Shown here piece by piece: positions 1-61,172 of a stretch of DNA of 64,000 bases. The stretch spans positions 62,001 through 126,000 of the IMG/VR virus record IMGVR_UViG_3300036770_003657; one strand, written 5' to 3'. The position numbers and the translations under genes are program-made. How positions within the stretch are numbered: the first letter of the stretch is position 1; the number at the start of each line of letters is the position of its first letter. Below the pieces are notes generated by a model that saw only the letters and a list, made by a program, of their open reading frames with translations, ran no database searches and had not been told where the DNA came from.

Positions 1-1
1 C

Positions 2-41089: not shown

Positions 41090-41123
41090 AAAGTATTAAA
41101 TTTTTTACTTCAAAGGAAGATAA

Positions 41124-44100
41124 ATGAGCACAAATATTAGATTTAAGCGTAGTGATATACCTGGCAAAGTACCATCACTAGAGAGTATTGACCTAGGCGA
41201 ATTAGCACTTAATACAGCCGATGGTAAACTGTTTATGAAGCAGGAAATCAAAGCACCACCTGGAGTGGCTGCTATTCAAAAGATCATCGAGATTGGTGCA
41301 ACAGAAGTACCTAATGTACTTTACGTTGCAAAGAATGGTGATGACAGCAACAGCGGAAGGACACTAGGCCAAGCTTTTTTGACACTGAAGAAAGCACTAA
41401 GCATAGCGACCCCTGGTACAACTATTTTCTTAAAGAGTGGGGAGTATATTGAAGATAACCCATTACGTGTTCCAGCTCGTGTGTCAGTTGTTGGTGACAA
41501 CCTGCGTAATACCACAGTACGTCCAAAGAACCCAACCAAGGATATCTTTTGGGTATACAATGGTGCTTATATCTTCTGTATGAACTTTAAGGGTCATATT
41601 GCACCTAGTGCGGCAGTATGTTTCCCACCAGACGGTAGTGCTGGCGAGATCGTAACAAGTCCATACACCCAAGCGGTTACAAGTATTACAACTACTGGTA
41701 CAGGTATGCGTGTTGACGGTGCATTGACAACAGGCCTACGCTCAATGGTTTGTGATGCGTTTACACAATATAACCAAGGTGGTATTGGTATTCACATGTT
41801 GAACAGAGGTAATACTCAGCTTGTATCTATCTTTACAATTTGCTGTGACATTAGCTTTATGTGTGAGAACGGTGGTTTCTGTTCAGTTAACTTGTCAAAC
41901 AGCTCATTTGGTAACTACGGTCTTGTAAGTCGTGGAGCCAGTGAACCACTATATCGTGGTGTTGTTAAGAAGTCAGCTGGTCGTCAGATCACATTTAAGA
42001 ATTTAGCAAGACGTCCTAACATTGGTGATGGTGTACTTTTTGCCGATTACAACCAAAGAACCTGTGATAGAGACAATGGTCTTGTAGTAGATAGTTTAGC
42101 ATTTGACTTACTGTACGAAGGCACTACTCAAAGTACATTTAGTGGCCTACGTTATTGGAAGAAAGATGATATCACTACAGGAATAGAACAACAAGAACAG
42201 ACAGCAGCAGCTATCAAACGTGCTCAGACAGTTGCTAGAGCTGTGGTAAAAGATGTAGCATTTACAAGTCCAAGTAATAGTGTACAGCAAGTATTGTCAG
42301 CTGCACTAGGTATTAGTGTAGGTAGTGACACAGCCAAGAGAATTATTACTGAAGAATTTGATATTATCAGTAAAATTGTAGCAGATGGTCCAAATAGCCC
42401 AGCTCTAATTATTGGACCTGATCTAGATGCAGCAGAACCAGAATATAAAAAATTAAGAGAACAAGTTTTAGATAGAAAAGCTCAAATTGTTGATGAAACA
42501 ATTACTTTCTTAAAGACAAACTATCCTACACTTGCATATGTAACATCAAAGTGTAAGCGTGACGTAGATTTGATCATCGAAGCAGTTATCGATGATATGA
42601 TTTTTGGTACAAATTATAAAACAATTAAGGCAACTCTTTCATATTTGAAAGCTACCGTTAATGAATATAATGTTCCAGAAAATCAAAGAGTAGCCACTAT
42701 TGAAGCATATAAGTTTGCTAGAGACCGTATTGTTCCTTTAGTTCAAGAAGATGCCACACTATTAGCTAGAGTACAGGCTAATTTTGAAATTGTAACAAAA
42801 GGTCTAGAACAGGATGCAGCAGCACCAAATGCAAGAGGTGCAACATTTATTAAGAATTTATTAGATCCAAGCAACGCTGATTACGGTTTAGTATTCCCAG
42901 CTCAACAGGATACTGATGCTGATGTTGTTAACCTAGTTACAAACTTACAGGAAAACAAGAATTTTGTTATTGCAGAAGTTATTGATTACATCAATAAGAA
43001 TTGGCCAGAAGTAGTTAGATACGGATATAGTGAAACTACTTGTAGTCGTGATTTAGGTTATGCTATTGATGCAATTTGTTATGACATTATTTACGGTGGA
43101 AATAGCCAGACATTAGATGCTGCTAAGAGATACTATAACTATGCTAGCGGCCTAAGTGAACTACGTAGTAGTGAAGAAGTTCCTGCCACTATTGATGCTT
43201 TTGGTCGTGCTCAATTACTAGCCCAACGTGTAGTTATTAAGGATGAAATTGAAGCCACTTCTAATGCAACACAGGTAATAAATGGTTTAACAGCTACAAC
43301 TCAAACACAAGTTAATAAACTTGGTGGATTGTTTAGTGTACTGTTAAAACAATTAGAAACAAGTACAGTAGGCACCAGTGATTTTATTCAACCTAATGGT
43401 ATGCGTTTAGATGATGAAGGGTTAGATAATGCTTATGCTCTACTACAAGCAAACAAGGCATTCATTAGAAATGATGTTGTAAATTATCTAAGCAGAGCAT
43501 ATCCAGGATTTGACTACGATAGAGTAAAATGTGCTCGTGATGTAGACTATATTGTTGACAGCGTTTGTTTTGACCTAGTACACGGTGGTAATCGTCAGGC
43601 TGTTACAGCTGGTATTTACTATTATGATTTCAATGAAGAAACAAATGTACTAAAGAGTGTAGTACCAAATCAAATCAAGCAAACAGTAAATGCCTACAAG
43701 TACATGAAGGAATTGCTACGTGATGTACTAACCTGTAGCCCAGTTCCAAATCCTTGGCAAGGCAATGTGCCACAAATTACAGATCTTCCAGCAGCCACAG
43801 GTAGTGAAGTAGTTGCAGTGGGCAATTTGATTGATATTATCAATGAGATCTTACAAGAAGGCCCAAATAATACAGAAGATAGTATCCAAAGAATCAAGCA
43901 ACCAATTGGTCTAACAGCAAGCTCAGATCCTAATAAGATTCGTGCATTTAATCTATTGATGGCAAACCGTCAATTTATTCGTGCTGAAATGATTGCTTAT
44001 ATTAACCAAAACTGGTATACAATCAGTGATGGTGATACACAATTTGCTCGTGTTAATACAGCAACAGATCTAACACTTGGTACAACTACAACAGGTTATC

Positions 44101-47100
44101 CAACTGTAACATATCAGCCAAGTTTATACAAATCTATTCGTGATGCAGTATTGGCAGCTAAAGAAGATATTAAGACAGAAACAATTAAGTTTATGGCTAA
44201 CAGCTTCTTTGACAACTTTAGCTTTAACAAGCCAAAGTGCTATAGAGACGTTGGTCTTATTTTAGATGCTATCCTAAGTGATATGATCTTTGGCAGTAAC
44301 TATAAGACAGTTACAGCAGCCATTAGCTACTTACGTGCATATGCCAGTGAAGTAGTTGGCGCACAGAAAGTACAAACAGTGGCCAGCTTAAAAGCTGCAA
44401 AAGATATTACACTACGTAGAATTGTAACACCAGCTGCTAAAGAAGAAATTAGCACAAGATTTGATATCGTTATCAATATTTTAGATGGTGCAAGAGTAAA
44501 TGATCTTGGAGAAATTACAACAAATGCTACAGTGGATGGTGTAAGTTATACTCAATTATCTGGTTATGCTAGTGCATTGAACTATCCAATCCCAGTAAGA
44601 AATAACGAAGAAGATATTGATCGTTATACAGCAGTTAACATTCTACGTGACAATATGGCCTTTATTAAGGAAGAGATTGTCAGTTATATTGATGCTAACT
44701 TTACTCTAAATGAATTTGACAGAGAAAAGTGTGCTCGTGATGTAGGATTTATTGTTGATGCACTTGGATATGACCTAGTATTTGTTAGTAACTTCCGTGC
44801 TATCAGTGCAGGACGTAGTTATCTAAGAGCTAACAGTGCTAAAGTTTCAGGAAGTCAAAAACTAGCAACTTTAGGTTCATTTAGATATCTCAAGAAATTA
44901 GTAACAGAACTAGTTAAAGGTAACAACCTAGCAGTCAATAGTGTTCAACGTGGTATGGATATCATTATTGATATTCTTGACAAAGGTGAGGAAGCAACAC
45001 CTAAGTATATGATTCCATTCCCAGCAACAGGACGTAGTGTAGAATACAAACGTGCTCGTGATCTAGTTCAAAAGAATAGAGAGTTTATTATTGATGATGT
45101 ATTAACTTACATTAACACACCAGGTTTGGAATTACTTCCAGGTGAAGTGGAATTTAAGTTACTAACAGCATCAACATCAAATGGTATAACTACTAAAACA
45201 TTTTTTACAGATGGAACATTTACTGTAAGTTATACACAAACAGAAACTCGTGTAGTTCTTGCTGTTGGTGATCTAGTGAGAGTAAGTGGTAGATTGTTTG
45301 GTACAAGTAATATTGATGGATTTTCATCACCAGCCACATACAAAGTGGCCAGTAAGACAGATAGTAATTTAGAAGGTGATCCAGCAAAACCAGCAACTAC
45401 AGAGTTCAAACTAGTAAATCTTGACGGTAGCGCAGTAACAACATTTGGTGGCCCAACTGGTAAAACTACAACAATGAGATTTGAACAGGTTAAGGCTGCT
45501 AATTATGCAGATCCAGCTGGATTTGATATTAGAAAATGTCGTCGTGACCTAGAACTAATCCTAGATGCTGTATATTATGATACAACTTATGGTGGTACAC
45601 TAGAATCAGAAGTAGCTGGTAAGAGCTATGTAGCTGGAGCATTAAGTCAATTAGATCCATTAGGTGGTCAAGGTGATGAAGTATATGCTACACTAAGAGC
45701 TTACAACTATTTGAAATCTCTAATTAGTACAGTGGCTCAAGATATTGTTTGGGTACCAACTGTTGGCAACACAACTACACAGGTACGCAGTCCAAATGGT
45801 AGTGATGGTAGTGCTACTGCTGCTAAGGAAATGGAAACTTGTATCAAATTAATTATTAAGTTAATTGATGACAGCGTAACTGAAAGCCCAGCATTTACAG
45901 ATTTGACCACAGTAACAAGTGCCCCAAGTACTGATTGGTGTGATCCAGCACTAGTTAAAGCACAGAAGGCACTACAGGCTGGTAAGGAAGTTACAAAAGA
46001 ACAGGTTACAGATTTTGTAGATGAAAACTATGTATTATTTGGTTATGACAGAGATAAGTGTGCTCGTGATGTAGGTTATGTAATCGAAGCAGTACGCTAT
46101 GATATGCTGTTCAACAGCAACTTCCGTAGTATTGTAGCTGGTCGCAGCTACTATCGTGCTATGAGCAGTGTAGTTGTTAAGGATCAAAAGACAGCAACAT
46201 TGGCCAGTTTCCAACACTTAAAAGATAAGTTGTTAGAAATTGTCAAGCCAGTTAATCCAGATAATCCAACAACAGCTGAATCTGTTAGTGTACAGCGTGT
46301 TACACGTAGTATGAATATTATTCTCGACATTTTAGAGAATGGTATTGCAGTTGAGCCAACAATATTGTTGACAGAGCCAACTGGTGGTACAGGTAATGCT
46401 TATGCTAGTGCAGATCGTGCTCAATTACGTGATGATATTCAAGCTAATCGTGTTACAATTGAAGATGCTCTAATTACTTGGATTGATGGCCAAACAGTAA
46501 CAGGTCAACCATTTGAGGGTGTAACTTACAATGAAACAGCCTGCCGTAGAGATGTTGAGTATATTTTAGATGCATTGATTTATGACTTGACCTATGGCGG
46601 TGAATTAGAAACAACCGTTGCTGCTCGTGCTTATTATGGTGGTACAACTGATATTAATCTTGCATTAGGTTCAGATGAAGTAGCACTCACATTGGCTGCT
46701 TATGCACAACTTAAGACAATTATTGATTCAAATTCAGCCGCAAGTGTTACACCAACAAATGATCTAATTGATATAATCATTGATTATATTAATACAGGTA
46801 CAGAAGTTGCTGCTGCTACACCAGATTTTAGTTGGGTTGATAATGGCATCAGAGTGTTTAACGATAAACTTGCACTAACTGCTACAGTTAATAAATTAAA
46901 AATGTCTGTAACAGATTTTGTAGACTTAAACTTTGCCTACAATAGAGACAAGTGTTATAGAGATGTTGGCTTCCTAATTGATGCACTGTGTTATGACCTA
47001 CTATATGGTGGTAACGTTGACACAACTCAGGCTGCTATTGCTTACTTTGATGGTGCAGTTACTCCAAAGAGTACAATTCCTAAGCAGATCATTCAAACTG

Positions 47101-53100: not shown

Positions 53101-56100
53101 TTGATACACTAACTGCCGATGCTGAAGATCCTGATACACCACTAGTAGTTGGTCGCGAATACAAGATTATAAGTCAAGGTAAGACTACTGTTCCAGCTGG
53201 TGAATTTATTGTAGGCGGTCAATACAAAATTTTACAAGTAGGTGATGTAGGTCAGGTAGGTACTACAGATTATACCACTACAGGTGTAATTCCAGGAACA
53301 AGTACTCCAGCAACTAATACAGTTGGTCTAGTATTCCAAGCAACAAGTACTGGTATTGGTACAGGTCAGGCAATATATTATACAGATTATACACTATTTG
53401 GTGCAAGAAACAATGATGTAGGTACTGTATTTGTTGCCACAGGTTCACCAAGTAGTGCAACTGGTGGTAGTGGTCAAGTTAAGAGCGTGAGCTTCCGTGA
53501 ACGTGCTGAAAGACTATTTGATCTGTTCCTAGCTATATTAGACAGTGATACAGTAGCCATCGAAGCATTAGGTTATGATGTTGATACAGACTTTGATGTT
53601 CCAGCTAAACAAGGTCTAAGACCTACTACACAGTTGAACGGTGGTATCAATAATAGTACAACAACAATTACAGTTGACAGTAATGTTGAATATCCAACTG
53701 CTGGCATTTTATTAATTGGTACAGAAGAAATAACCTATACTGGTAAGAGTGGTACTACAGGATTTACAGGAGTAGCAAGAGGTGCTAATAGTACAACTGC
53801 TGCTGCTCATGCAGATAATGCAGTGGTTACTTGTTTAAATCCAAGTTATTATTTACTAACTCCACCAGAACTAGAAACAACTGACTTCGATAATACAAGT
53901 GATTATAATGATGCCGTAGCTGCTCAAACAGCTAGAATCACAGCACGTAATCAAATCAATGCTGCTAGACAGAGCCTAGAAGATGATCTAATTACATGGA
54001 TTGATGCACAAGTAGCAGCCAATGCAGGTGATGGTGCTGGTAACTTTGGTACAGCTTTTGAAGCTTACTGGATTGCTAATAGTTATGAGAAGCGTACAAA
54101 GTGTAGAGAGGACATCAAGTTCATTCTAGACGCAATTACATATGACTTAACTTATGGTGGCAATCAAGAAACTGTAGTTGCTGGTAAAGCTTACTATGAT
54201 GGTACAGTATTAAGTGTAGACAAATTAGCTACAATTGATGCTTACACTCACTTTAAGACATTACTTGCTACAGTAGCAGGTGCCAATAGTGGTGATGATG
54301 AAACAGTTACAAAACTTGTTGATGATCTAATCAGTTATATTGATCCAAAGATTGAGGATTTAAGACAAGTTGATGCTGATACAAGTTGGGTTGACAGTGA
54401 ACTATACGTATTCAGTGACAAGCTCAAGGCTGCTGCTAACACAGTAGCTAAGGCTACAACTGATTATGTAACTGCTAACTTTGCAGGTCTAAGCTATGAT
54501 GTAGCAACTTGCCAACGTGACGTAAAACTAGTAATAGATGCAGTACGTTGGGATATGATGTTTAATAGTAACTTCCGCACTATCGTAGCTGCTCGCAGTT
54601 ATTATAGAATTCAAGCAGCAACAGTAGTTGGTGCCCAGAAGGAAGCCAGTCAAAAGGCATTTGAAGTTGTTAAAGTTGCTCTAGATGATCTAGTCAAGAG
54701 TGACAGTGTAGCACAAGCTCGTGTATCAGCTCTAATGGATATTGTTATTAATCTACTAGCAGCCGTTGATGAAACAGCAGCTTTAGCTACATTACCAGCA
54801 ATTAGTACTCCATATGGTGGCACACCAAATGCCAGCAACATTGGATACTTAAATGCTCGTGATCGTATTGCTAGAAACAGAGACTTTATCGTTGATGAAA
54901 TGAGTGAATGGCTAGATGATCAAAACTATACATTTCCTGCATACGATAAAACTGTTTGCCTACGTGATATTGAATTAGTTCTTGATGCTGTAGCATATGA
55001 TTTAACATATGGTGGTAATATGGCCAGTGTTGAAGCAGGTAAGGCCTACTATGCAGGTGCAGTACTGCCAAATACAACAGGTACAGATCACGTTGATGCT
55101 ACTAAGGCAGCATTTGCTCATCTAAGAAATATAATTGAAGACGTAGCTCTTAACAATACAATTACTCCTACAACAGGTGTAACAGTAACATATGTTCAAG
55201 ATGATCAAAGCAAGGAAACAGCAGACGACGCTCAAGCAGGTGCTAAGGTAGTTGATCTAGTTGATATAGTAATTACTTGGGTTGACAGCAATAGTGGTAC
55301 AGCTGAATTCCGTCCAAGCACAAACTGGGTTGACAATAATCTGGCGCTAATTGCTAGCACAATGCTAGATCGTAAAGAAAGTTTAGGTTTACAGGTAACT
55401 GACTTTATTGATGCAGAGTATCCAACATTATTTGCTGATTCAGATACAGCAGCAGGTGAAGATCCTGGATATAGTAAAGACAAGTGCAAGCGTGATGTTG
55501 GTTTAGTCACAGAAGCTGTACGTTGGGACATGATGTTTGCTACAAACTTCCGTAGCTGGACAGCAGGTCGTGCTTACTATAGACAAGCTGAAAACTTACT
55601 AGCTGATGGATTAGCAAGTCAAGGTCAGAAAGAAGCCAGCCTAGCAGGTTATAGATTCTTGAAGGGCCTGTTAGCTACTATCGCAGGCAATAATGTAACA
55701 GCCAGCAATAGAATAAAAACTGCTATGAACGTTGTAATTGATACTTTAGAGTATGGTCCAACTACACGTAATGCTTATGATGCTAGATTGGTAAAAGCTG
55801 TTGAACTTATTGATGCTAATAAGGATGCATTGATAGCCACTATGACAACTTGGTTACAAGATGGTGCTCAAAGTTTAACTGATGGTGTGAGCTTTGGTAC
55901 TAATTATAGTGAAGAAAAGTGTATTCGTGACTTAGGTTATTTAATTGATGCTATCAAGTATGACTTAACCTATGGTGGTAATATGGAAACTGTCACAGCA
56001 GGTTTAGCCTACTATGATGGTGTTGTATTACAAGGTGGTGTTGGTAACACACAACCAGGTGATGCAAGTCATATTGCTAAGACACAGGAAGCATTTACAT

Positions 56101-59100
56101 ATTTAGGTACACAAATAGCAGCTCTTGCAACAATGCCAGCAAGTATGGCTGACAAAGTTGCAGCTCTAATCACTGATGTAAATCAAAGTATTAGAACTGC
56201 TGATGAAAATCTTGTAATTGGTAAGCAATATAAGATTATAAGCGTAGGCGATACAGACTGGAACACTGTAGCAGGTACAACAGGTGTTACATATGTTGCA
56301 GGTGATATAGTTAAGGTAGCTGCTGTAGGTGCAGGAACTGGTTATGCTACTCTTGTTAATAATGAAGTTAAGGCTGACGCAAGTTGGGCTGAATCAAGTT
56401 TACAAGAATTAGCAGTCACAATGAGACTACAACAAACAGCTATTAAGGCACAAGTTACTGATTATGTAGAGGATAAATTCCCAGGACTAATGACCGAAGC
56501 ACAAAAAGTTAAGTGTGCTCGCGATGCAGGATTATTAATTGATGCTGTACGTTGGGATATGTTGTTCAACAGTAATTTCCGTAGTATCACAGCAGGTCGT
56601 GCATACTATAGAACAGTACTAGCTCTAGTAGCAGATGCTCTTGCAGGTATTAATCAGAAGCAGGCCAGTGTAGCAGCATTTACATTCTTAAAAGGTATCT
56701 TACAAGGTATTGTTGCAAGTAATGCAATTGCGTACGAGCGTGTAACAGCCAATATGGATATTATCCTAGAGATAATTGAAAATGGTTTAGGTGATCAGGC
56801 TAGTCCAGCAATTACTTATGGTGCTGTAGCAGATGCACAACGTCAAGCTGCACACGATAACTTAATTGATAACATTCCATTCTTAAAGCAGGAAATTATC
56901 AAGTATGTTGATGCTACTTTTGACAATATTGAGTATGATGAAGTCAAGTGTGCTCGCGATGTAGAGTTAATTACTACAGCAGTTGCTTACGATATGGTAA
57001 CAGGTAGTAATTATCAAACTGTTACTGCTGCTCGTGGCTACTTGCGTAGCTATGCTAGTGACGTTATAACTGAAGCCAAGCAGAAGCATATTACATTATT
57101 AGCCTTCAAGTATCTAAAGAACTTGCTAACTAATTATGTTGGTGGTAATACAGCAGCTAAGAACAGCATTACAGCTAACATGGACACAATAATCAATACG
57201 GTTTATGATGCACATCAGTCAACCGTGACTGCTGTTACAGCTAGTAATGATACATTTACAACCAATGATACAAGTTGGATGGAAGTTGACACAGCTATTG
57301 TATTTGGTGGTACATTAATTGGTGGCGTAACTGGTGGTACAACTTATTATGTTAAGAGTGTAGAAAGTGCTACAGAGTTTACAATAAGTGCTACACAAGG
57401 CGGTGCTACATTTGATGTTGCTTCAGATGCTAGTGGTTCAATGGCAGTTAAGAAAGTACAAACATTTAATGTAATTATACCAACTGCAAGTGTTACCGTA
57501 AGCGATGATCAAACAACTTTAAACACTTATTTGACTAATAATACCAATATTGAAACATTAGTTACAACGGGTATTAACAATAGTGGTGGTTATGGTTCAG
57601 CTGCTAATGCAGACATTTGCAAGCGTGATATTAGACTACTAGTACAGGCACTAGCATTTGACTTAACATATGGCGGTAACTGGGCAAGTATTACTGCTGC
57701 TAAGAGTTACAGAGATGGTACTAACGCTCTAAACATTCCAAGCGGTGAAGCAACTAATACAAACACTGCATTTAATGCCGTACGTGATAAGATCAAAACA
57801 GATACTTCGTTGGACACTGCTACTGATACAAGAATTGATACTCTTGTAGCTTATGTAACAGGTGTAATTGGTAGTGCAACATATGCTACACCAGCAATAG
57901 TTTATCCAGAACTATTAGGTAGTGATAATGCACTAGAAGCAGCTAGAAATGTTCTAATAAGCAATATTGTTAATGCTAAGGCTAAGGTAATTCGTTATGT
58001 AAATGATCGTGCTTACTTCCAATATGATGTATTAAAATGTGAGCGTGACATTGGATTTATTCTAGATGCCGTAGCAATTGACGTAGCAACAGGCAGTAAC
58101 TATCTAAGTGTACAGGCAGGTATTAGTTACTTACGTGCTAATGCTACAAATGCTGTAGCTGCTCCTCAGAAATGGGCAATCCTAGCAGGATTGAATGCTG
58201 CTAAACAGATTCTAGCTGCAAGAGTTATTACAAACCAAGCAGCAGTTAGTGCAATTCGTGCTAAACTAAGTGTAGTGATTGATATTATCAATGACGGTGT
58301 AGCACCAAGTGTAACATTAAATGGTAGCGATCAAGTAACAGCGGAAAACACAACAGGTAGTCCATATGTTAGCTTGTCATATCCAACTACTGTAACAGGT
58401 GGTGTAGTAGGCAGTATAACTGTTCAAAATAGAATTGATGCTGCTACAACATTACGTACAGGAACAAGTGGTTCAGATCTAATTAGATGGATAGTTATAA
58501 ATGAAGTATTAAATGCAGTCAACGGTACTGCTGCTGCTGGTACTTATGATAAAGCCAAGTGTGCAAGAGATGTAGCATTGATATTAGATGCACTAGCACA
58601 CGATTTATTATACGGTGGTAACTATGCTTCAGTTCGTGTTGCTAATAGTTATTATGCTGGAACAGCTAATCAGTTAGGTAGTAATCCAGATGAAATAGCT
58701 GCTATCACAACTGCTCTAACTGAAGTTAAGAATCGTTTAGATAACTACGCTCCATTTATTGGTACAGGTATTGAAACTAGACTAGATACATTAGTTGATT
58801 TGATCGAAAATGTAATTGATACTGGTAGTACAAGCGCAGAACTTGCAGGTCTTGTAGTTGAATTACCAACTGCTGCAATCCAAGCAAGTGCTCTAGAATC
58901 AGCATATGACACTTTAGTTGCTGCTAAAGAAGCAATGACATATGAAATTTTAGATAGCATCAATAGCAGACCATTCCTAGTATACGATCAAGCCAAGTGT
59001 GAAAGTGATGTAGAAACTATTCTTGACGCACTAAGATATGATATTATGTTAGGCAGTAACTTCAAGAGTATAAGAGCAGGTCAAGCATACTTAAGAAGTT

Positions 59101-61172
59101 ATACTAAGGCAGTTACTCAAGAGCAAAAAGCAGCTACCATTGGAGCACTATACTTTATTAAGAAGTCAGTGTCCGTGGCATTAGATGATGATGCTGATGT
59201 AGCAGATGCAAGTGTAACTATAGCACGTCAACTAATGGACTTAATAATAGATATTCTAGACAGAGGTCCAGCAGTAGTGCCAGGTGATGTAGCTAAACTA
59301 GCTCCTCCATATCAGTCAGAAGTTGTTACAATAACTGCTACTGCTAATACACAAGCAGTATCAACTATATTAAACAACAAGGCATTTATTAAGGCTGAAG
59401 TACGTTCGTTCTTAGACAGAAACTACAGTGAATTAGATTATGACAAGATTAAGTGTGAAAGAGATGTGGATTATATCTTAGACGCACTACGTTATGATCT
59501 AGCATTTGCTGCTGCTAGTGATCAAGCAAATAGTGAAACACGCGAAGCAGGTCTAGCATATTGGAAAGGAAATGCAGGTATTACATTGGGCACACACCCA
59601 AGTAATATCGATGATCCAGACTTTGATGGAGTAACTACTGGTAATGAAAATGAGCAAGATGCTACTGTGGATGCATATACAGAATTAGCAAATATCATTG
59701 AAGCTATATTAAACAATAGTTACACAGCTACTCAAACAGTGGTATCAAAAGGTACTTATGTAAGTGGTGCTAATGCTGCTAGTACTGTAGCTAAAGACTT
59801 AATTCTTAATATTAAGAATATGGTTGCTGCTACAAGTTTAGCAGGTGCTGAAGCTGTGATTCCAACAGCTGATATAAGATATCCAGCACCAGCAGGTGAC
59901 ACTGATGTTAATGATGTATTAGCATTAGATGTTGGTACTAATCTAAAAGCAACACTACCAGCACTAACTACTACAGAAATTACAGCAGCATTTGCTACAC
60001 AGTTCTTCGTGTATAACAAAACTAAGTGTGCTCGTGATGTTGGATTTATTGTAGAGGCTCTAGCATTTGATGCACTGTATGGTGGTAACAAAGAATCTAG
60101 AGTTGCTGCTGATCAATATGCTTACAAAGGTGGTTTAGTAATACCTGTAGCTACAAAAGGACCAACAGTTGGTGGCTTCGCTAGACTAAAAGCAATCATA
60201 GATGATATTGTAGCAGGTGATGCAGTTACAGCGACTACTGGAGTTATAGAAGCACAGCAAGGAACTAGCAATCCAAGTACTTTAACTGGTGTAAGTGATC
60301 TAGTTCAAATTACCATAGATGTACTAAATGGTAAAGCATTACCTGCTCTAGTAGATCCAACATTCAGTGCTGTAACTGGTTACAAACCAGACAACTTAGT
60401 AGTACGTAGCATTGTGCGTGATAGTAGTCCAAGAATAGCAGCAGAGACTATTACATACATCAATGAAACATATGCTGGATTTGGTTATCTACAAGATACT
60501 TGTAAGCGTGACATCGGTCTAACCTGCGATGCTATGGCTTATGACTTGATCTATGGTGGTAATAGTAGAACTAAGTTTGCTGCTGAACAGTATTACAGTG
60601 GTGGTCGTTTCCAGATCCCAGCTGATAGTAAGAGTGCTACAGTGGCCAGCTTTGAGTATCTAGGTGCATTGATCAGAAAAGTAATTAAGAATGAGGCAAT
60701 TATCACATTCCAAAACTTTGTTGATCAAGACAAGAGCAATGAGCAGGCTACAAATAGTGAAGTTGCTAATGTGGCAGCATTGACAGATGCGTTTACAGAT
60801 ATCTTAACAAATGGTTACATCAGTGTACTACAACTTGATGCAACATTTAATGGTAGTGTAGATGATAACACATATGCTACATTCCACCAGGTAAGTACTA
60901 TTACAACAACTGGTCACACACTAGAATGGGTTGGAACTGGTATTGACGTAGATAGTGCTTTACCATACAACGGCGGTGTACCAAAACCAGAGAATCAATT
61001 GGTTAGCGAGAAGGGCGGATTTATTAACTTCACCAGTACAGATGAAAAAGGTGACTTTAGAATTGGTCCAGACTTAACAATCAAGCGTGACTCAGGTAGT
61101 ATCGTAGGTAGAGCGTTTAACAAGAGCTTGTTAGGAGTTGTAACACCATACATCCTAGCACTACAAGGTTAA
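41124..61172 (+). CDS. Giant virion-associated protein: fibre-type N-terminus, beta-helix, and 34 phycobiliprotein/globin-like repeats
   Basis: 6682 aa. The N-terminus IRFKRSDIPGKVP..GELALNTADGKLF is a fibre-attachment (Mtd-N-like) motif. LYVAKNGDDSNSG..AFLTLKKAL starts a pectate-lyase-like beta-helix. Repeats of KC.RD...I.DA..YD follow. Confidence 0.8.
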   Translation: MSTNIRFKRSDIPGKVPSLESIDLGELALNTADGKLFMKQEIKAPPGVAAIQKIIEIGATEVPNVLYVAKNGDDSNSGRTLGQAFLTLKKALSIATPGTTIFLKSGEYIEDNPLRVPARVSVVGDNLRNTTVRPKNPTKDIFWVYNGAYIFCMNFKGHIAPSAAVCFPPDGSAGEIVTSPYTQAVTSITTTGTGMRVDGALTTGLRSMVCDAFTQYNQGGIGIHMLNRGNTQLVSIFTICCDISFMCENGGFCSVNLSNSSFGNYGLVSRGASEPLYRGVVKKSAGRQITFKNLARRPNIGDGVLFADYNQRTCDRDNGLVVDSLAFDLLYEGTTQSTFSGLRYWKKDDITTGIEQQEQTAAAIKRAQTVARAVVKDVAFTSPSNSVQQVLSAALGISVGSDTAKRIITEEFDIISKIVADGPNSPALIIGPDLDAAEPEYKKLREQVLDRKAQIVDETITFLKTNYPTLAYVTSKCKRDVDLIIEAVIDDMIFGTNYKTIKATLSYLKATVNEYNVPENQRVATIEAYKFARDRIVPLVQEDATLLARVQANFEIVTKGLEQDAAAPNARGATFIKNLLDPSNADYGLVFPAQQDTDADVVNLVTNLQENKNFVIAEVIDYINKNWPEVVRYGYSETTCSRDLGYAIDAICYDIIYGGNSQTLDAAKRYYNYASGLSELRSSEEVPATIDAFGRAQLLAQRVVIKDEIEATSNATQVINGLTATTQTQVNKLGGLFSVLLKQLETSTVGTSDFIQPNGMRLDDEGLDNAYALLQANKAFIRNDVVNYLSRAYPGFDYDRVKCARDVDYIVDSVCFDLVHGGNRQAVTAGIYYYDFNEETNVLKSVVPNQIKQTVNAYKYMKELLRDVLTCSPVPNPWQGNVPQITDLPAATGSEVVAVGNLIDIINEILQEGPNNTEDSIQRIKQPIGLTASSDPNKIRAFNLLMANRQFIRAEMIAYINQNWYTISDGDTQFARVNTATDLTLGTTTTGYPTVTYQPSLYKSIRDAVLAAKEDIKTETIKFMANSFFDNFSFNKPKCYRDVGLILDAILSDMIFGSNYKTVTAAISYLRAYASEVVGAQKVQTVASLKAAKDITLRRIVTPAAKEEISTRFDIVINILDGARVNDLGEITTNATVDGVSYTQLSGYASALNYPIPVRNNEEDIDRYTAVNILRDNMAFIKEEIVSYIDANFTLNEFDREKCARDVGFIVDALGYDLVFVSNFRAISAGRSYLRANSAKVSGSQKLATLGSFRYLKKLVTELVKGNNLAVNSVQRGMDIIIDILDKGEEATPKYMIPFPATGRSVEYKRARDLVQKNREFIIDDVLTYINTPGLELLPGEVEFKLLTASTSNGITTKTFFTDGTFTVSYTQTETRVVLAVGDLVRVSGRLFGTSNIDGFSSPATYKVASKTDSNLEGDPAKPATTEFKLVNLDGSAVTTFGGPTGKTTTMRFEQVKAANYADPAGFDIRKCRRDLELILDAVYYDTTYGGTLESEVAGKSYVAGALSQLDPLGGQGDEVYATLRAYNYLKSLISTVAQDIVWVPTVGNTTTQVRSPNGSDGSATAAKEMETCIKLIIKLIDDSVTESPAFTDLTTVTSAPSTDWCDPALVKAQKALQAGKEVTKEQVTDFVDENYVLFGYDRDKCARDVGYVIEAVRYDMLFNSNFRSIVAGRSYYRAMSSVVVKDQKTATLASFQHLKDKLLEIVKPVNPDNPTTAESVSVQRVTRSMNIILDILENGIAVEPTILLTEPTGGTGNAYASADRAQLRDDIQANRVTIEDALITWIDGQTVTGQPFEGVTYNETACRRDVEYILDALIYDLTYGGELETTVAARAYYGGTTDINLALGSDEVALTLAAYAQLKTIIDSNSAASVTPTNDLIDIIIDYINTGTEVAAATPDFSWVDNGIRVFNDKLALTATVNKLKMSVTDFVDLNFAYNRDKCYRDVGFLIDALCYDLLYGGNVDTTQAAIAYFDGAVTPKSTIPKQIIQTVAAYERLKEVLDQVVQLKDVTPSGNQFEAKARATASMDLVIKLVKDGPAFTPKKPFLMPAPTSGANCAADADWLNATKMISANRAFLTAEVTAFIKATYPSLVYNQVKCERDVDLIIDAVLYDLTYGGKVATTLAAEAYYEGTSDTLSGVAITGTAGQFSCTSTKLTVGDTVKITGTLGGTGTITGYATGDVYKISVTNGSTTFTLVNLDDTAIVTTAGTPTGLTYTHGQLPASLSGELTESLAAYTYLGDLLELVAAGEKVATSARDTYQNIVVQRVGVGDANGDAATRAGALVKTVLNRIIDGDADTTAAAIAGPSTAWVDEKLVALSNAIDNATFRSDVKAEVNTLLTTKFDIGYTGTQKTQCEQDIDAVIDAVRFDVMFGSNYRSQLAGNAYYRGFSGLANVLGAQKDGSVATFELVKDAILEKVALYTVEQDKGGQAGSTAAGDAAYDLIQLIIDDLNDDGVTETEALVDWVDLDLQDLNDILIDSKTGANGADDLPQLVTDYIDNRYEGSLTYNQADCQEDIRSIIDAVRFDMMFNSNFRTITAARAYFRAQASKVVGEQKAATIEAFKFLKEKLSAIVITSAQAVERVQDRMDLLIRIVDKGEKAIPAYVLPSPTGYNTSRAGTVSFGYARNLIETNREFLKAEVLKFIRTDASTNTLNFNETKCLRDLDLILDAVYYDMTYGGNMESIIAAGAYYLGATAGDITGDQTAAITGDDVAATIDAYERLRDMIKLVAEGKDVSDLQIIFPQVQGDAGSTAGAQTAKNLAYVIRNLVNQEGSFKVTAPTLAQPSIGWVPAALRQPNDLIVLMQTSDTASGAYVGRASIQSQVTEWVRLQLNAANFNAAPSAIADPGSGPLAQYFDDNGITAVGNWTDWFVLIPVTAIVSGQTYKIADLGTTTTWANHAASGNTSAVGDEFVANGTAGTGDGKVVRVLKASQMEPGKRYKIKDAGDTNWNTYSTSIITATSGNTFIANEDAPPTASGTEGTVYEMFTYDITKCERDVQLILEAVRYDMMFDTSFRTATAARSYWRQQANNALSTGSTALSVYPQKEQSTLLFTFMKSVLQTLPAKYPNKALSDLGEGQIPGIVNGSTAYTRIGKLMDYIIGAVGAANLAAVNALLPAKPYSLPLPAGGTNNSSDANFRAARDLIELNRNFIKAEVIAWIDQQKREEREGFQQAEFNFNRSECAEDIDLILDAIYYDLTYGGNMESYTAGLAYYSGIGIESLPADEREATIRAYNYMGMLLYDVARNQLTTSYQTALEQVKGTAGSIETSRRLGELVDIVINVVKGGPKQVPLRVDPDFLAGDETLAFVRIAVQEQKQELQARIADYIDSFILQYNTEKCARDVGLILDAAMYDLVLNSNFQSVTAGSVYLQKAANVVYSTQIGPQLQAIKFIRDQVIRISQTPPLVKNEDAIGRITNLFDTMFDIIDKGVEVAPPIVNIPPVGAAFNPNAVNAANSIIANKEFLKEEVVAYITANYKTYDQSRCSRDVGLIIDAALYDLLLDTNYNSVKAGLAYRRATSSLVLTDQLLETLGGIDFAKQRVVELLDDADAIASVTRSFELISSIIGGGSVPTSRVPLPGSSVYALSRPSGSNYRDPAFQTAATALRDAKATLQTAVTAWINSQINGASVGSTWDGFTYDATKQAKCEEDVGYIIDAVAYDLIYGGNMESLNAGLAYYTATADESLPSNDEIQNTIAAYTYLADQVRTTVNAEFTLEPDTDALSAIEAQNLVLGIRNLIDSRANAVATPSIPSQVWVDPLLQEINQTFIQEKKRLQDVVIDYVNEIDRYTDGAISVPADYDKDKCRRDVGLVLDAVRYDMMFGTNFRTIVAGRSYRRALAASGLIGGAQATANLSAFKELKERVLGKKLVGVEITGTGGTFTCTAPVTDRDAPLVVNQPVRVSGVYATGAGTIGTPGTDSEFSNIATQPKTYYIIATNGTTSFTLSAEVGGAAIATTTGDGGAASAGGLTFEIRPSLESLDEVTTQGLLDTLTADAEDPDTPLVVGREYKIISQGKTTVPAGEFIVGGQYKILQVGDVGQVGTTDYTTTGVIPGTSTPATNTVGLVFQATSTGIGTGQAIYYTDYTLFGARNNDVGTVFVATGSPSSATGGSGQVKSVSFRERAERLFDLFLAILDSDTVAIEALGYDVDTDFDVPAKQGLRPTTQLNGGINNSTTTITVDSNVEYPTAGILLIGTEEITYTGKSGTTGFTGVARGANSTTAAAHADNAVVTCLNPSYYLLTPPELETTDFDNTSDYNDAVAAQTARITARNQINAARQSLEDDLITWIDAQVAANAGDGAGNFGTAFEAYWIANSYEKRTKCREDIKFILDAITYDLTYGGNQETVVAGKAYYDGTVLSVDKLATIDAYTHFKTLLATVAGANSGDDETVTKLVDDLISYIDPKIEDLRQVDADTSWVDSELYVFSDKLKAAANTVAKATTDYVTANFAGLSYDVATCQRDVKLVIDAVRWDMMFNSNFRTIVAARSYYRIQAATVVGAQKEASQKAFEVVKVALDDLVKSDSVAQARVSALMDIVINLLAAVDETAALATLPAISTPYGGTPNASNIGYLNARDRIARNRDFIVDEMSEWLDDQNYTFPAYDKTVCLRDIELVLDAVAYDLTYGGNMASVEAGKAYYAGAVLPNTTGTDHVDATKAAFAHLRNIIEDVALNNTITPTTGVTVTYVQDDQSKETADDAQAGAKVVDLVDIVITWVDSNSGTAEFRPSTNWVDNNLALIASTMLDRKESLGLQVTDFIDAEYPTLFADSDTAAGEDPGYSKDKCKRDVGLVTEAVRWDMMFATNFRSWTAGRAYYRQAENLLADGLASQGQKEASLAGYRFLKGLLATIAGNNVTASNRIKTAMNVVIDTLEYGPTTRNAYDARLVKAVELIDANKDALIATMTTWLQDGAQSLTDGVSFGTNYSEEKCIRDLGYLIDAIKYDLTYGGNMETVTAGLAYYDGVVLQGGVGNTQPGDASHIAKTQEAFTYLGTQIAALATMPASMADKVAALITDVNQSIRTADENLVIGKQYKIISVGDTDWNTVAGTTGVTYVAGDIVKVAAVGAGTGYATLVNNEVKADASWAESSLQELAVTMRLQQTAIKAQVTDYVEDKFPGLMTEAQKVKCARDAGLLIDAVRWDMLFNSNFRSITAGRAYYRTVLALVADALAGINQKQASVAAFTFLKGILQGIVASNAIAYERVTANMDIILEIIENGLGDQASPAITYGAVADAQRQAAHDNLIDNIPFLKQEIIKYVDATFDNIEYDEVKCARDVELITTAVAYDMVTGSNYQTVTAARGYLRSYASDVITEAKQKHITLLAFKYLKNLLTNYVGGNTAAKNSITANMDTIINTVYDAHQSTVTAVTASNDTFTTNDTSWMEVDTAIVFGGTLIGGVTGGTTYYVKSVESATEFTISATQGGATFDVASDASGSMAVKKVQTFNVIIPTASVTVSDDQTTLNTYLTNNTNIETLVTTGINNSGGYGSAANADICKRDIRLLVQALAFDLTYGGNWASITAAKSYRDGTNALNIPSGEATNTNTAFNAVRDKIKTDTSLDTATDTRIDTLVAYVTGVIGSATYATPAIVYPELLGSDNALEAARNVLISNIVNAKAKVIRYVNDRAYFQYDVLKCERDIGFILDAVAIDVATGSNYLSVQAGISYLRANATNAVAAPQKWAILAGLNAAKQILAARVITNQAAVSAIRAKLSVVIDIINDGVAPSVTLNGSDQVTAENTTGSPYVSLSYPTTVTGGVVGSITVQNRIDAATTLRTGTSGSDLIRWIVINEVLNAVNGTAAAGTYDKAKCARDVALILDALAHDLLYGGNYASVRVANSYYAGTANQLGSNPDEIAAITTALTEVKNRLDNYAPFIGTGIETRLDTLVDLIENVIDTGSTSAELAGLVVELPTAAIQASALESAYDTLVAAKEAMTYEILDSINSRPFLVYDQAKCESDVETILDALRYDIMLGSNFKSIRAGQAYLRSYTKAVTQEQKAATIGALYFIKKSVSVALDDDADVADASVTIARQLMDLIIDILDRGPAVVPGDVAKLAPPYQSEVVTITATANTQAVSTILNNKAFIKAEVRSFLDRNYSELDYDKIKCERDVDYILDALRYDLAFAAASDQANSETREAGLAYWKGNAGITLGTHPSNIDDPDFDGVTTGNENEQDATVDAYTELANIIEAILNNSYTATQTVVSKGTYVSGANAASTVAKDLILNIKNMVAATSLAGAEAVIPTADIRYPAPAGDTDVNDVLALDVGTNLKATLPALTTTEITAAFATQFFVYNKTKCARDVGFIVEALAFDALYGGNKESRVAADQYAYKGGLVIPVATKGPTVGGFARLKAIIDDIVAGDAVTATTGVIEAQQGTSNPSTLTGVSDLVQITIDVLNGKALPALVDPTFSAVTGYKPDNLVVRSIVRDSSPRIAAETITYINETYAGFGYLQDTCKRDIGLTCDAMAYDLIYGGNSRTKFAAEQYYSGGRFQIPADSKSATVASFEYLGALIRKVIKNEAIITFQNFVDQDKSNEQATNSEVANVAALTDAFTDILTNGYISVLQLDATFNGSVDDNTYATFHQVSTITTTGHTLEWVGTGIDVDSALPYNGGVPKPENQLVSEKGGFINFTSTDEKGDFRIGPDLTIKRDSGSIVGRAFNKSLLGVVTPYILALQG
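42050..60600 (+). repeat. 34 protein-level repeats with invariant Cys and Asp (C-x-x-D; 28 are C-x-R-D)
   Basis: Counted by hand from the translation. First Cys codon at 42063, last at 60501. Confidence 0.9.

What the first reader, a model, noticed from the sequence alone, without database searches (positions are those of the whole stretch)
41124..61172. 6682-aa virion-type protein built from 34 phycobiliprotein-like repeats, each retaining the bilin-site cysteine
Seen: 34 repeats with consensus Y(D/N)xxKCxRDVxxIxDAxxYDxxxGxNxxxxxAxxxYY. Many are preceded by LxxNxxFIxxE..YI and followed by ATxxAFxxLKxxL and RVxxxMDxIIxIL helices. Cys and Asp(+3) are invariant, and 28 of 34 are CxRD. Established: phycocyanin/allophycocyanin bind bilin at the conserved CxRD site (for example [21 protein letters not shown]), and their later globin helices (ATVQAIQAMKEV) resemble the ATxxAFxxLK helix. 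Inference: a fibre-anchored, beta-helix-bearing phage protein that could display dozens of tetrapyrrole-binding globin domains for photoprotection, light or redox sensing, or mimicry of host pigment complexes. Alternatively it is a cofactor-free structural scaffold.
Basis: partly seen in the sequence, partly recalled or inferred. Interest (0 to 1): 0.85.

Follow-up and report, generated by a model that had tools for sequence, protein, structure and literature searches.

The report
Phage fibre of 34 phycobiliprotein-like domains
A 6682-residue virion protein of an uncultured 400-kb phage is mostly a string of 34 domains that have the fold of cyanobacterial light-harvesting phycobiliproteins and keep their pigment-attachment residues, so phage particles may carry pigments, though pigment binding has not been shown.

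Summary
ORF 41124..61172 (+) encodes 6682 aa with 34 repeats of about 140-170 aa. Cys and Asp(+3) are invariant and 28 of 34 repeats read CxRD.

The phycobiliprotein (PBP) reading of the fold holds on four independent lines:
- Pfam PF00502 hits.
- Profile searches of PDB return almost only phycocyanins, with the Cys aligned to Cys84.
- hhalign against 40 cyanobacterial PBPs gives 95.7% probability and P = 1e-8. Reversed and shuffled controls stay below 1%.
- Two AlphaFold models of different repeats with different alignments (pLDDT 84, pTM 0.77 and 0.81) each return 50 of 50 PBP-family top Foldseek hits.

In about 1600 domain copies from 150 related proteins, Cys, Arg and Asp are kept at 95%, 95% and 98.6%, and they are lost together. 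That pattern fits a ligand site.

Among cultured phages the domain occurs only in cyanomyoviruses, in giant "tail fiber" and "gp7" proteins. This window, however, has a Rak2-like jumbo-phage backbone and an unknown host.

Bilin binding is untested. No bilin gene lies in the window, and phage bilin genes do not co-occur strictly with the domain (P-SSM2, Syn1). I found no paper describing this fold in phage virions.

Verdict: a new viral branch of the PBP fold. Pigment binding is plausible (about 0.4) and easy to test.

The parts
41114..41119 (+). Ribosome-binding site AGGAAG, 4 nt upstream of the ATG
   Evidence: Read directly from the sequence
41124..61172 (+). Giant ORF, 6682 aa plus stop; virion fibre or baseplate-associated protein
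   Evidence: PHROG 5342 and 4527 (tail fibre), 701 and 18802 (virion structural), E down to 1e-140
41124..41963 (+). N-terminal non-repeat domain (aa 1-280). Shared with cyanomyovirus fibre proteins. Contains a short DUF1565 (beta-helix-type) match at aa 71-127 and seven Cys
   Evidence: tblastn gives 42-44% identity over aa 1-285 to P-SSM2 PSSM2_293, S-CAM9, S-PRM1 and others. Pfam hit. No PDB sequence match
41964..60824 (+). Array of 34 phycobiliprotein-like domains (aa 281-6567), interrupted by seven inserts. Two subtypes, A (YGGNxES) and B (FxSNFRS), occur in the order BBAABBABAAABBABABBABABABABBABABBAA
41964..43871 (+). Repeats 1-4. Envelopes 41964-42398, 42396-42827, 42876-43370, 43371-43871. 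Cys codons at 42063, 42552, 43041, 43530. Motifs TCDRD, KCKRD, TCSRD, KCARD
   Evidence: HMM envelopes and motif table
44079..44996 (+). Repeats 5-6. Envelopes 44079-44501, 44571-44996. Cys codons at 44238, 44730. Motifs KCYRD, KCARD. Repeat 5 is the unit modelled first
   Evidence: AlphaFold model mc95613ce85d4. PF00502 hit at aa 1036-1120
45378..47744 (+). Repeats 7-11. Envelopes 45378-45884, 45903-46352, 46359-46811, 46800-47249, 47259-47744. Cys codons at 45537, 46059, 46542, 46953, 47424
48027..49463 (+). Repeats 12-14. Envelopes 48027-48506, 48495-48935, 48942-49463. Cys codons at 48195, 48669, 49113. Repeats 12 and 13 read QCEQD and DCQED, so they lack the Arg
49932..52820 (+). Repeats 15-20. 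Envelopes 49932-50465, 50493-51005, 51003-51434, 51435-51851, 51879-52373, 52368-52820. Cys codons at 50115, 50682, 51153, 51588, 52074, 52548. Repeats 16 and 19 read ECAED and KCEED
53889..56210 (+). Repeats 21-25. Envelopes 53889-54353, 54354-54776, 54789-55307, 55293-55766, 55749-56210. Cys codons at 54102, 54510, 54957, 55485, 55920. Repeat 25 is the unit modelled second
   Evidence: AlphaFold model mdab0cb86fd2f
56355..57221 (+). Repeats 26-27. Envelopes 56355-56798, 56787-57221. Cys codons at 56514, 56949
57459..60824 (+). Repeats 28-34. Envelopes 57459-57890, 57885-58307, 58371-58835, 58848-59276, 59289-59837, 59862-60341, 60336-60824. Cys codons at 57618, 58038, 58560, 58998, 59454, 60027, 60501. 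Repeat 31 reads KCESD
52821..53888 (+). Largest non-repeat insert (aa 3900-4255), Gly/Thr-rich and probably beta-rich. Smaller inserts lie at 43872-44078, 44997-45377, 47745-48026, 49464-49931, 56211-56354 and 57222-57458
   Evidence: Gaps between HMM envelopes. No Pfam or PDB sequence match
60825..61169 (+). C-terminal non-repeat domain (aa 6568-6682), conserved with the C-terminus of PHROG 3442 proteins. Possibly the distal tip or an assembly domain
   Evidence: phrog_3442 profile positions 3858-3966 of 3967. No PDB sequence match

Best explanation
The ORF encodes a giant virion fibre or baseplate-associated protein of a roughly 400-kb T4-superfamily jumbo phage. A conserved N-terminal attachment domain and a small C-terminal domain flank 34 tandem copies of an all-helical domain. 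Each copy is about 140 aa and is followed by a short beta hairpin or an insert.

Shown computationally: this domain is a diverged member of the phycobiliprotein (globin-like) fold. It keeps the residues that hold the bilin at the Cys84 site of phycocyanin, namely Lys83, Cys84, Arg86 and Asp87, together with Gly89, Tyr97 and Gly102-Gly103 of helix E.

Inferred: each domain is a ligand site that binds a linear tetrapyrrole. Binding would be through a thioether to the Cys, with Asp on the pyrrole nitrogens and Arg on a propionate. The pigment would be acquired in the infected cell, either autocatalytically (as in ApcE or smURFP) or through a host S/U-type lyase. The mature fibre would then be a linear array of chromophores.

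More speculative: the most useful role I can propose is light sensing that gates fibre conformation and adsorption.

The confidence given below applies to the bilin-binding step. Confidence that the domain has a PBP fold and common ancestry is about 0.9.
For: Fold and homology:
- PF00502 scores 23.7 bits (cut-off 22.2) on the N-terminal half. 4 of 34 single repeats hit, best E 2.4e-4.
- The A1 profile against PDB returns phycobiliproteins in 32 of 36 hits, best E 0.013, with Cys aligned to Cys84.
- The A3 profile, built from 110 domains of other proteins, returns PBPs in 29 of 30 hits, best E 0.0036.
- hhalign of 400 family domains against 40 non-redundant PBPs gives probability 95.7%, P 9.8e-9, over 120 columns. 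Reversed and shuffled controls give at most 0.8%.
- Two AlphaFold models (pLDDT 83.8 and 83.7, pTM 0.77 and 0.81) each return 50 of 50 top Foldseek PDB hits from the PBP family (smURFP, the ApcE bilin domain, PC, PE, APC, cryptophyte beta subunits, a bacterial fluorescent protein). TM reaches 0.80.

Site:
- In 1619 domains from 150 representative proteins, C is kept at 95.0%, R at 95.1% and D at 98.6%, against 22% mean identity.
- Losses are coupled. All 20 domains that lost D also lost C. 34 of 72 that lost C also lost R (odds ratio 34). 22 of 26 that lost Y(+30) also lost C. Losses of D(+14) and N73 are not coupled to loss of C.

Context:
- Among 50,697 cultured phage records the repeat is found only in cyanophages, 192 records.
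- S-PM2 p091 has 5 CxRD repeats, P-HM2 gp7 has 2, and Syn1_101 has 2.
- S-PM2 and P-HM2 need light to adsorb, independently of host photosynthesis. P-SSM2 and P-SSP7 adsorb in the dark (PMC6628666) and have no repeat.
Against: - No chromophore test exists. I know of no report of pigmented or fluorescent cyanophage virions (own knowledge), and my literature searches found none.
- The window has no heme oxygenase, bilin reductase or CpeT. Neither do the 10-kb flanks of six related loci.
- P-SSM2 has ho1 and pebS but no repeat. Syn1 has repeats but no cpeT, pebS, pcyA or ho1 (Table 3 of PMC3037559).
- With the 14 motif columns masked, the remaining sequence similarity is weak, though in the same register (P 0.02 local, 0.003 global).
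- The B-E loop is about 9 residues shorter than in PBPs, and the X-Y dimerisation hairpin is not aligned.
- Single repeats fall below the Pfam cut-off.
- The most conserved residues, D(+14) and Y(+30), are not PBP hallmarks.
- The capsid and baseplate are Rak2/Phosso-like, so the host may not be a cyanobacterium and may lack PCB and PEB.
- The light-adsorption correlation rests on four phages.
Confidence: 0.4

Rival explanations
1. Cofactor-free structural scaffold. An ancestral phycobiliprotein-fold gene was captured by a cyanophage and amplified as a rigid helical spacer. The domains only set the length and stiffness of a fibre or baseplate arm. The conserved C/R/D/Y residues stabilise the fold or the contacts between domains and chains.
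For: - The protein sits in a structural module and matches tail-fibre and virion PHROGs.
- Copy number varies widely among relatives, from 2 to 37, as expected for a length-setting module.
- There is no linkage to bilin genes.
- The two most conserved residues are not PBP site residues.
- About 5% of domains have lost the Cys and are still kept in the proteins.
Against: - It does not explain why the PBP chromophore residues in particular (Cys84, Arg86, Asp87, often Lys83) are the ones kept at 95-99% in domains that share only about 22% identity.
- It does not explain why they are lost as a set while D(+14) is not.
- An unpaired, invariant Cys in every domain of an extracellular protein is unusual for a purely structural role (inference).
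Confidence: 0.35
2. The conserved site does different chemistry. The Cys-Arg-Asp-Tyr-Thr cluster binds another ligand (a metal, a non-bilin cofactor or a host surface molecule), or it forms covalent or disulfide cross-links between chains that lock the fibre.
For: - The coupled loss of C, R, D, Y(+30) and T(+48) indicates a functional site but does not identify the ligand.
- The pocket differs from PBPs, with a shorter B-E loop and no X-Y helices.
- The host may not make phycobilins.
Against: - All characterised members of the PBP fold family returned by Foldseek bind bilins.
- The register of Cys, Arg and Asp is identical to the bilin site.
- One Cys per domain in a trimeric fibre cannot be fully paired in disulfides (inference).
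Confidence: 0.15
3. The resemblance to phycobiliproteins is convergent or artefactual. A short KCxRD-type motif on an amphipathic helix drives both the profile hits and the AlphaFold models.
For: - E-values are marginal (PDB profile 0.004-0.01, Foldseek 1e-3 to 1e-2).
- Most of the hhalign score comes from the motif region.
- AlphaFold could be biased by a memorised motif.
Against: - Hit lists are essentially pure PBP in four different searches.
- The alignment spans 120-136 columns and helices B to H in one register, and keeps that register when the motif is masked.
- Two models from different repeats and non-overlapping alignments agree.
- Reversed and shuffled controls fail.
Confidence: 0.07

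Closest known systems
Phycobiliproteins (Pfam PF00502), especially C-phycocyanin alpha subunits such as PDB 6jpr_A, 1f99_A and 8iml_A
   Same: - Predicted helical globin-like fold.
- Helix E motif K-C-x-R-D-(V/I)-G-x-x-x-x-x-x-x-Y-x-x-x-x-G-G in the same register, with Cys aligned to Cys84, Arg to Arg86 and Asp to Asp87.
- A later 'A..al..mK' helix.
- Domain size of about 140-160 aa.
   Different: - 34 copies fused in one virion polypeptide, rather than free alpha and beta subunits.
- No aligned X-Y hairpin, and a B-E loop about 9 residues shorter.
- Extra invariant Asp(+14) and Tyr(+30).
- The two repeat subtypes do not map onto alpha and beta; both are closer to alpha.
- Single repeats fall below the Pfam cut-off.
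- Bilin binding is untested.
Bilin-binding PBP-like domain of the phycobilisome core-membrane linker ApcE (PDB 4xxi, 4xxk), and smURFP (6fzn, 7uqa)
   Same: - These are among the top Foldseek hits (TM up to 0.80).
- They are examples of a PBP-fold domain embedded in a large multidomain protein (ApcE).
- They attach bilin without a lyase (own knowledge), which is the attachment route a phage protein would most plausibly use.
   Different: - ApcE has one PBP domain plus REP linker domains and sits in the phycobilisome.
- smURFP is an engineered protein.
- Neither is repeated or viral.
Giant 'tail fiber' and 'gp7 baseplate wedge' proteins of T4-like cyanomyoviruses: S-PM2 p091 (T4-GC 830), Syn1_101 (T4-GC 1070), P-HM2 PHM2_086; PHROGs 5342, 4527, 701, 18802, 3442
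   Same: - True homologues with the same repeat and the same CxRD site.
- The same N-terminal domain, 42-44% identical in some cases, and the same C-terminal domain.
- Virion structural context.
   Different: - Cultured phages carry 2-5 clear copies; this protein has 34. Metagenomic relatives reach 37.
- Here the gene sits in a Rak2/Phosso-like jumbo-phage backbone, not in Kyanoviridae.
- None of these proteins is annotated or described as phycobiliprotein-like in the records or papers I could search.
Bilin biosynthesis-associated globins (BBAGs) of heterotrophic bacteria (PMC10151467); PDB 8u0f 'bacterial fluorescent protein' appears in both Foldseek lists
   Same: PBP-fold relatives found outside phycobilisomes. 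They have been proposed as possible partners for phage-made bilins (PMC11480375).
   Different: - BBAGs are single-domain cellular proteins defined by linkage to bilin synthesis genes.
- No such linkage is seen here within the window or within 10 kb in relatives.

Membership tests
Phycobiliprotein family (PF00502, globin-like clan) | Sequence match to the family model above the curated cut-off | tested here: inconclusive
   The 3333-aa N-terminal half scores 23.7 bits against a cut-off of 22.2. Scanned singly, only 4 of 34 repeats match at E<1 (best 2.4e-4), and repeat 5 scores 18.8 bits, below the cut-off. Profile-profile comparison is significant (P 1e-8).
Phycobiliprotein family (PF00502, globin-like clan) | All-alpha globin-like fold (helices A/B, E, F, G, H) | tested here: met
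   Two AlphaFold models (pLDDT 84, pTM 0.77 and 0.81). Foldseek top 50 in PDB are all PBP-family chains, with TM 0.5-0.8. This is a prediction, not an experimental structure.
Phycobiliprotein family (PF00502, globin-like clan) | Chromophore-site residues Cys84, Arg86 and Asp87 on helix E | tested here: met
   Aligned in register in HMMER and hhalign alignments. Cys and Asp are present in 34 of 34 repeats here and Arg in 28 of 34. Across 1619 domains they are kept at 95%, 95% and 98.6%.
Phycobiliprotein family (PF00502, globin-like clan) | Covalently bound bilin | not testable with these tools
   Needs expression with bilin synthesis genes, or analysis of virions.
Phycobiliprotein family (PF00502, globin-like clan) | N-terminal X-Y hairpin and alpha/beta heterodimer building (alpha-beta)3 discs | tested here: not met
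   The hhalign alignment starts at PBP position 20-36, so the X-Y region is not matched. Repeat subtypes A and B are both nearer to alpha than to beta. Quaternary structure itself was not testable.
Cyanomyovirus giant fibre/baseplate repeat proteins (PHROG 5342, 4527, 701; T4-GC 830, 1070) | Significant match to the family profiles, with shared N- and C-terminal domains | tested here: met
   phrog_5342 E 4e-140 and phrog_4527 E 3e-134, with the C-terminus matching phrog_3442. tblastn to S-PM2, S-SCSM1, P-SSM2 and others.
Cyanomyovirus giant fibre/baseplate repeat proteins (PHROG 5342, 4527, 701; T4-GC 830, 1070) | Encoded by a Kyanoviridae-type T4-like cyanophage | tested here: not met
   The major capsid protein is 66-70% identical to Rak2-like jumbo phages (Phosso, Vibrio 2.275.O, E. 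coli A4). The baseplate wedge protein is 36% identical to Phosso, Erwinia and Serratia jumbo phages. The contig is 399,796 bp.
Bilin biosynthesis-associated globins (BBAG) | Genomic linkage to heme oxygenase or a ferredoxin-dependent bilin reductase | tested here: not met
   No such gene among 33 window ORFs at E<=1e-5. No HO or PebS homologue in contig 57-144 kb or in six related loci by phmmer. About 64% of the contig was not examined.
Pfam PF27647 (DUF8360) | Match to the family | tested here: inconclusive
   The nearest ESM Atlas clusters carry DUF8360 (score 0.94, but only 137-144 shared features). On record, DUF8360 is attached to the 1154-aa baseplate wedge protein at 5245..8709 and not to the giant ORF. 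My repeat HMMs do not hit that protein. The model itself is not in the local Pfam copy.

The most novel reading that the evidence does not exclude
Phage virions carry their own bilin chromophores. The phycobiliprotein-like domains of the fibre or baseplate proteins are loaded with host-made or phage-made bilins during assembly and act as a virion-borne photoreceptor. This receptor would make adsorption light-dependent, which would explain the unexplained, photosynthesis-independent light requirement for adsorption of S-PM2 and P-HM1/2. It would also give at least some phage bilin genes (cpeT, pebS, pcyA/X, hemO) a phage-encoded substrate.
Probability: 0.2. Interest if true: 0.95.

Novelty: new variant of a known kind. 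Interest (0 to 1): 0.8.

Why it matters
Phycobiliproteins are regarded as light-harvesting proteins of cyanobacteria, red algae and cryptophytes, with recently found bilin-binding globin relatives in heterotrophic bacteria. A large viral branch of the fold would extend where and how this fold is used. The branch has 1497 representative proteins at 50% identity, built into virion fibres in arrays of up to about 37 domains, and it retains the chromophore triad.

Two open questions become directly testable:
- Why adsorption of several cyanomyoviruses needs light independently of host photosynthesis (PMC6628666, PMC2984593).
- What phage-encoded bilin genes are for, which is described as a 'mystery', 'enigmatic' or 'unresolved' (PMC3037559, PMC11480375).

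On the second question my presence/absence data already argue against a simple one-to-one link.

If the domains attach bilins autocatalytically, they would also be a source of small fluorescent tags. If they turn out to be apo-proteins, they are a clear case of a host photosynthetic fold recruited as a viral building block.

Tried and rejected
1. DNA-level search for the source among cultured phages found no match.
2. The search for homologous proteins with the repeat profile returned only one 160-aa fragment. E-values scaled to 5.8 billion sequences hide PBPs.
3. The ESM Atlas pointed to DUF8360 and Gp6-like_1st. I followed this up and it is not the same domain.
4. I tested whether subtypes A and B correspond to PBP alpha and beta. 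Rejected, because both are closer to alpha.
5. I tested whether phage bilin genes exist to load the domain. P-SSM2 has the genes but no domain, and Syn1 has the domain but no genes.
7. Walking the 400-kb contig reached only 57-144 kb. One look-up failed because the gene has a GTG start. The region to the right is repetitive, with ORFs open in several frames, so I stopped. The host and the remaining roughly 256 kb stay unexamined.
8. N-terminal, C-terminal and insert segments against PDB sequences gave nothing significant.
9. A residue-by-residue map of conserved columns between the families failed on column bookkeeping. Equivalences quoted in this report come from the HMMER and hhalign alignments themselves.
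10. The papers of Jia et al. 2010 and Gasper et al. 2017 are not held. Statements about them rest on citing papers or on my own knowledge.
Full report
**What is there**

The window holds one uninterrupted ORF at 41124..61172 on the + strand. It encodes 6682 aa, starts with ATG, and has an AGGAAG ribosome-binding site 4 nt upstream. A motif scan finds 34 copies of a unit carrying C-x-x-D, with Cys at aa 314 to 6460. 28 of them read C-x-R-D.

Aligning the 34 units (A1) gives invariant Cys, Asp(+3), Asp(+14) and Tyr(+30). An HMM of the unit finds 34 full domains in this ORF and none in any other frame of the window.

The domains cover 5278 of 6682 residues. The remainder is an N-terminal domain (aa 1-280), seven inserts of 48-356 aa, and a 115-aa C-terminal domain.

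Two subtypes can be told apart: A (Y-G-G-N-x-E-S/T) and B (F-x-S/T-N-F/Y-R-S/T). They tend to alternate, with 23 transitions among 34 units (permutation p = 0.024).

**Is the repeat phycobiliprotein-like?**

Four independent tests say yes.

1. Pfam. PF00502 (Phycobilisome protein) is the top hit of the N-terminal half, at 23.7 bits against a cut-off of 22.2. It is the only family hit by more than one single repeat (4 of 34, best E 2.4e-4). Single repeats stay below the cut-off.
2. Profile against PDB sequences.
   - The A1 profile returns 36 hits at E<=10, of which 32 are phycobiliproteins, mostly phycocyanin alpha (best E 0.013).
   - A second profile (A3), built from 110 domains taken from other proteins of the family, returns 29 PBPs among 30 hits (best E 0.0036).
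   - In the alignments 'fTYDe---akCrRDvgyIvdAvayDllygg' pairs with '[30 protein letters not shown]'. So Cys aligns with Cys84, Arg with Arg86 and Asp with Asp87, and Lys83, Gly89, Tyr97 and Gly102-Gly103 are also shared.
3. Profile-profile comparison.
   - I collected cpcA, cpcB and other PBP genes from cyanobacterial genomes and reduced them to 40 non-redundant sequences.
   - hhalign against 400 family domains gives probability 95.7% and P = 9.8e-9 over 120 columns, covering PBP positions 36-164.
   - Reversed or column-shuffled PBP alignments give at most 0.8%.
   - The window's own 34 repeats alone give P = 2e-5.
   - When the 14 columns around the motif are masked, the same register is still found, but only weakly (P = 0.02 local, 0.003 global). 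Most of the sequence signal therefore lies in helix E.
4. Predicted structure.
   - Repeat 5, modelled with the internal repeats as its alignment, gives pLDDT 83.8 and pTM 0.77.
   - Repeat 25, modelled with an alignment of domains from other proteins, gives pLDDT 83.7 and pTM 0.81.
   - Both are helical bundles.
   - In both cases all 50 top Foldseek matches in PDB are PBP-family chains: smURFP, the bilin-binding domain of ApcE, phycocyanin, phycoerythrin, allophycocyanin, cryptophyte beta subunits and a bacterial fluorescent protein. TM-scores reach 0.80.

I put fold and common ancestry at about 0.9.

**Is the conserved motif a functional site?**

The profile search of 1.84 billion representative proteins finds 1497 family members at E<=1e-3, many of them giants with up to 37 domains.

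In the 1619 domains of the best 150 proteins the conservation is as follows:

| Residue | Kept |
|---|---|
| Cys | 95.0% |
| Arg(+2) | 95.1% |
| Asp(+3) | 98.6% |
| Asp(+14) | 99.4% |
| Tyr(+30) | 97.9% |
| Thr(+48) | 87% |

Mean identity across these domains is about 22%.

The losses are not independent:
- All 20 domains without Asp(+3) also lack the Cys.
- 34 of 72 Cys-less domains also lack the Arg (odds ratio 34).
- 22 of 26 domains without Tyr(+30) also lack the Cys.
- Loss of Asp(+14) or Asn73 is not coupled to loss of Cys.

Cys, Arg, Asp, Tyr and Thr therefore behave as one module that is kept or discarded as a whole, which fits a ligand or reaction site. Related domains are not independent samples, so these odds ratios describe the pattern and should not be read as probabilities.

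In phycobiliproteins, Cys84 carries the thioether to ring A, Asp87 contacts the pyrrole nitrogens and Arg86 contacts a propionate (established knowledge of the family).

**Where does the domain occur?**

In the collection of 50,697 cultured phage records, tblastn with six repeats hits 151 records at E<=1e-5 and 192 at E<=1e-3. All but one of the 192 are named as Synechococcus phages, Prochlorococcus phages or cyanophages; the remaining record, named 'Marine', was not listed and I did not identify it. The hits fall in genes annotated as tail fiber, short tail fiber, structural protein or gp7 baseplate wedge.

HMM scans show:
- five CxRD domains in S-PM2 p091
- two in P-HM2 gp7, plus degenerate copies in PHM2_096
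- two in Syn1_101
- none at E<=1 in the complete genomes of P-SSM2 and the podovirus P-SSP7

BFVD matches of the model are the same cyanophage proteins, and none of them is named as PBP-like. I found no paper linking phage virion proteins to the phycobiliprotein fold.

**What genome is this?**

The window is positions 62001-126000 of JGI contig Ga0310126_0000016, also listed as IMGVR_UViG_3300036770_003657, which is 399,796 bp long.

It carries a T4-superfamily structural module: gp20, gp21, gp23, gp25, gp5, gp53, gp46/47 and gp55. The relatives of that module are not cyanophages:
- The capsid protein is 66-70% identical to Rak2-like jumbo phages (Sinorhizobium Phosso, Vibrio 2.275.O, E. coli A4).
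- The baseplate wedge protein is closest to Phosso and to Erwinia and Serratia jumbo phages.
- Two ORFs just upstream of the giant gene resemble Caulobacter and Brevundimonas phage tail proteins.

Only the giant gene and a short stretch downstream of it tie the locus to cyanomyoviruses. The host is therefore unknown. Either this is a jumbo cyanophage of a new type, or the fibre module has moved between phage lineages.

**Tests bearing on bilin binding**

- No heme oxygenase, bilin reductase or CpeT is among the 33 window ORFs.
- None lies in contig 57-144 kb or within 10 kb of six related giant genes.
- In Table 3 of PMC3037559, P-SSM2 has ho1 and pebS, yet it has no repeat. Syn1 has none of cpeT, pebS, pcyA or ho1, yet it has repeats.

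Phage bilin genes are therefore neither necessary nor sufficient companions of the domain. This weakens the idea that they exist to load it. It does not bear on loading from the host's own bilins and lyases.

On the other side, the four phages with published dark-adsorption phenotypes line up with repeat presence. S-PM2 and P-HM2 need light and have repeats. P-SSM2 and P-SSP7 adsorb in the dark and have none (PMC6628666). Four phages, two of them from different families, make this a lead only.

**Most likely mechanism**

- Shown: a virion fibre or baseplate-arm protein made of a beaded array of PBP-fold domains with an intact, co-evolving Cys-Arg-Asp site.
- Inferred: the site binds a linear tetrapyrrole covalently. 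This would happen autocatalytically, as in ApcE, or through host S/U-type lyases, during assembly in a bilin-rich host cell.
- Speculative: the chromophores make fibre conformation or deployment light-dependent.

I give bilin binding 0.4, an apo structural scaffold 0.35, other chemistry at the site 0.15, and a spurious resemblance below 0.1.

**Comparison with known families**

It works like, and is probably descended from, the phycobiliprotein family. I do not file it as an ordinary member, for these reasons:
- Single domains fall below the Pfam cut-off.
- The X-Y hairpin and the alpha/beta logic are missing.
- The context is a virion.

It is a bona fide member of the cyanomyovirus giant fibre/gp7 repeat family (PHROGs 5342, 4527 and 701), but it sits in a different phage backbone and has an unusually high copy number.

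The DUF8360 lead from the ESM Atlas was not confirmed.

**Verdict**

This is a new viral variant of a known fold, of high interest because a bench experiment lasting a week could settle it.

Noticed in passing
whole window (contig Ga0310126_0000016, positions 62001-126000): The source is a 399,796-bp viral contig. Its capsid and baseplate genes are closest to Rak2/Phosso-like jumbo myoviruses (66-70% identity for gp23). Its giant fibre gene is shared with Kyanoviridae cyanomyoviruses. This is a mosaic whose host is unknown.
   Followed up: partly
window 1-5240 (-), continuing left of the window: This is the N-terminal part of a second giant ORF, 4800 aa on record. It has a CBM_5_12 carbohydrate-binding module and matches virion-structural PHROG 10938. 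It lies in a stretch of only 28-29% GC, against 36-40% in the rest of the window.
   Followed up: partly
window 5245-8709 (-): A 1154-aa baseplate wedge protein (36% identical to Phosso and Erwinia/Serratia jumbo phages) carries PF27647 (DUF8360) in the precomputed records. This is the family that the ESM Atlas wrongly suggested for the repeat.
   Followed up: yes
L140 11000-20894 (contig about 134-144 kb, right of the window): This region has ORFs open in several frames on both strands. Called genes start with GTG or TTG, several of those checked end in TAG, and they encode periodic 'YKAFKVYK'-type proteins. Relatives occur in dozens of viral contigs, including other contigs of the same metagenome. 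I cannot tell whether this is a repeat-rich gene family or a miscalled region.
   Followed up: no
L003 8710-11728 (P-SSM2 213709-216727): In P-SSM2 the heme oxygenase gene PSSM2_291 lies two genes upstream of fibre gene PSSM2_293. The N-terminal 285 aa of PSSM2_293 are 44% identical to the N-terminus of the giant protein. P-SSM2 has no PBP-like repeat anywhere.
   Followed up: yes
window 41964-60824: Two repeat subtypes (YGGNxES and FxSNFRS) tend to alternate, which suggests that the unit of amplification was often a pair. They do not correspond to PBP alpha and beta.
   Followed up: yes
window about 14821-14898: There is a divergent transcription point. Genes to the left are on the minus strand and genes to the right on the plus strand, and GC skew and AT skew change sign at the same place.
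   Followed up: no
window, ORFs not individually located: A SegE-type GIY-YIG homing endonuclease (PF19835, E 9e-33) and an NAD-synthetase-like PHROG (phrog_447) occur among the structural genes.
   Followed up: no
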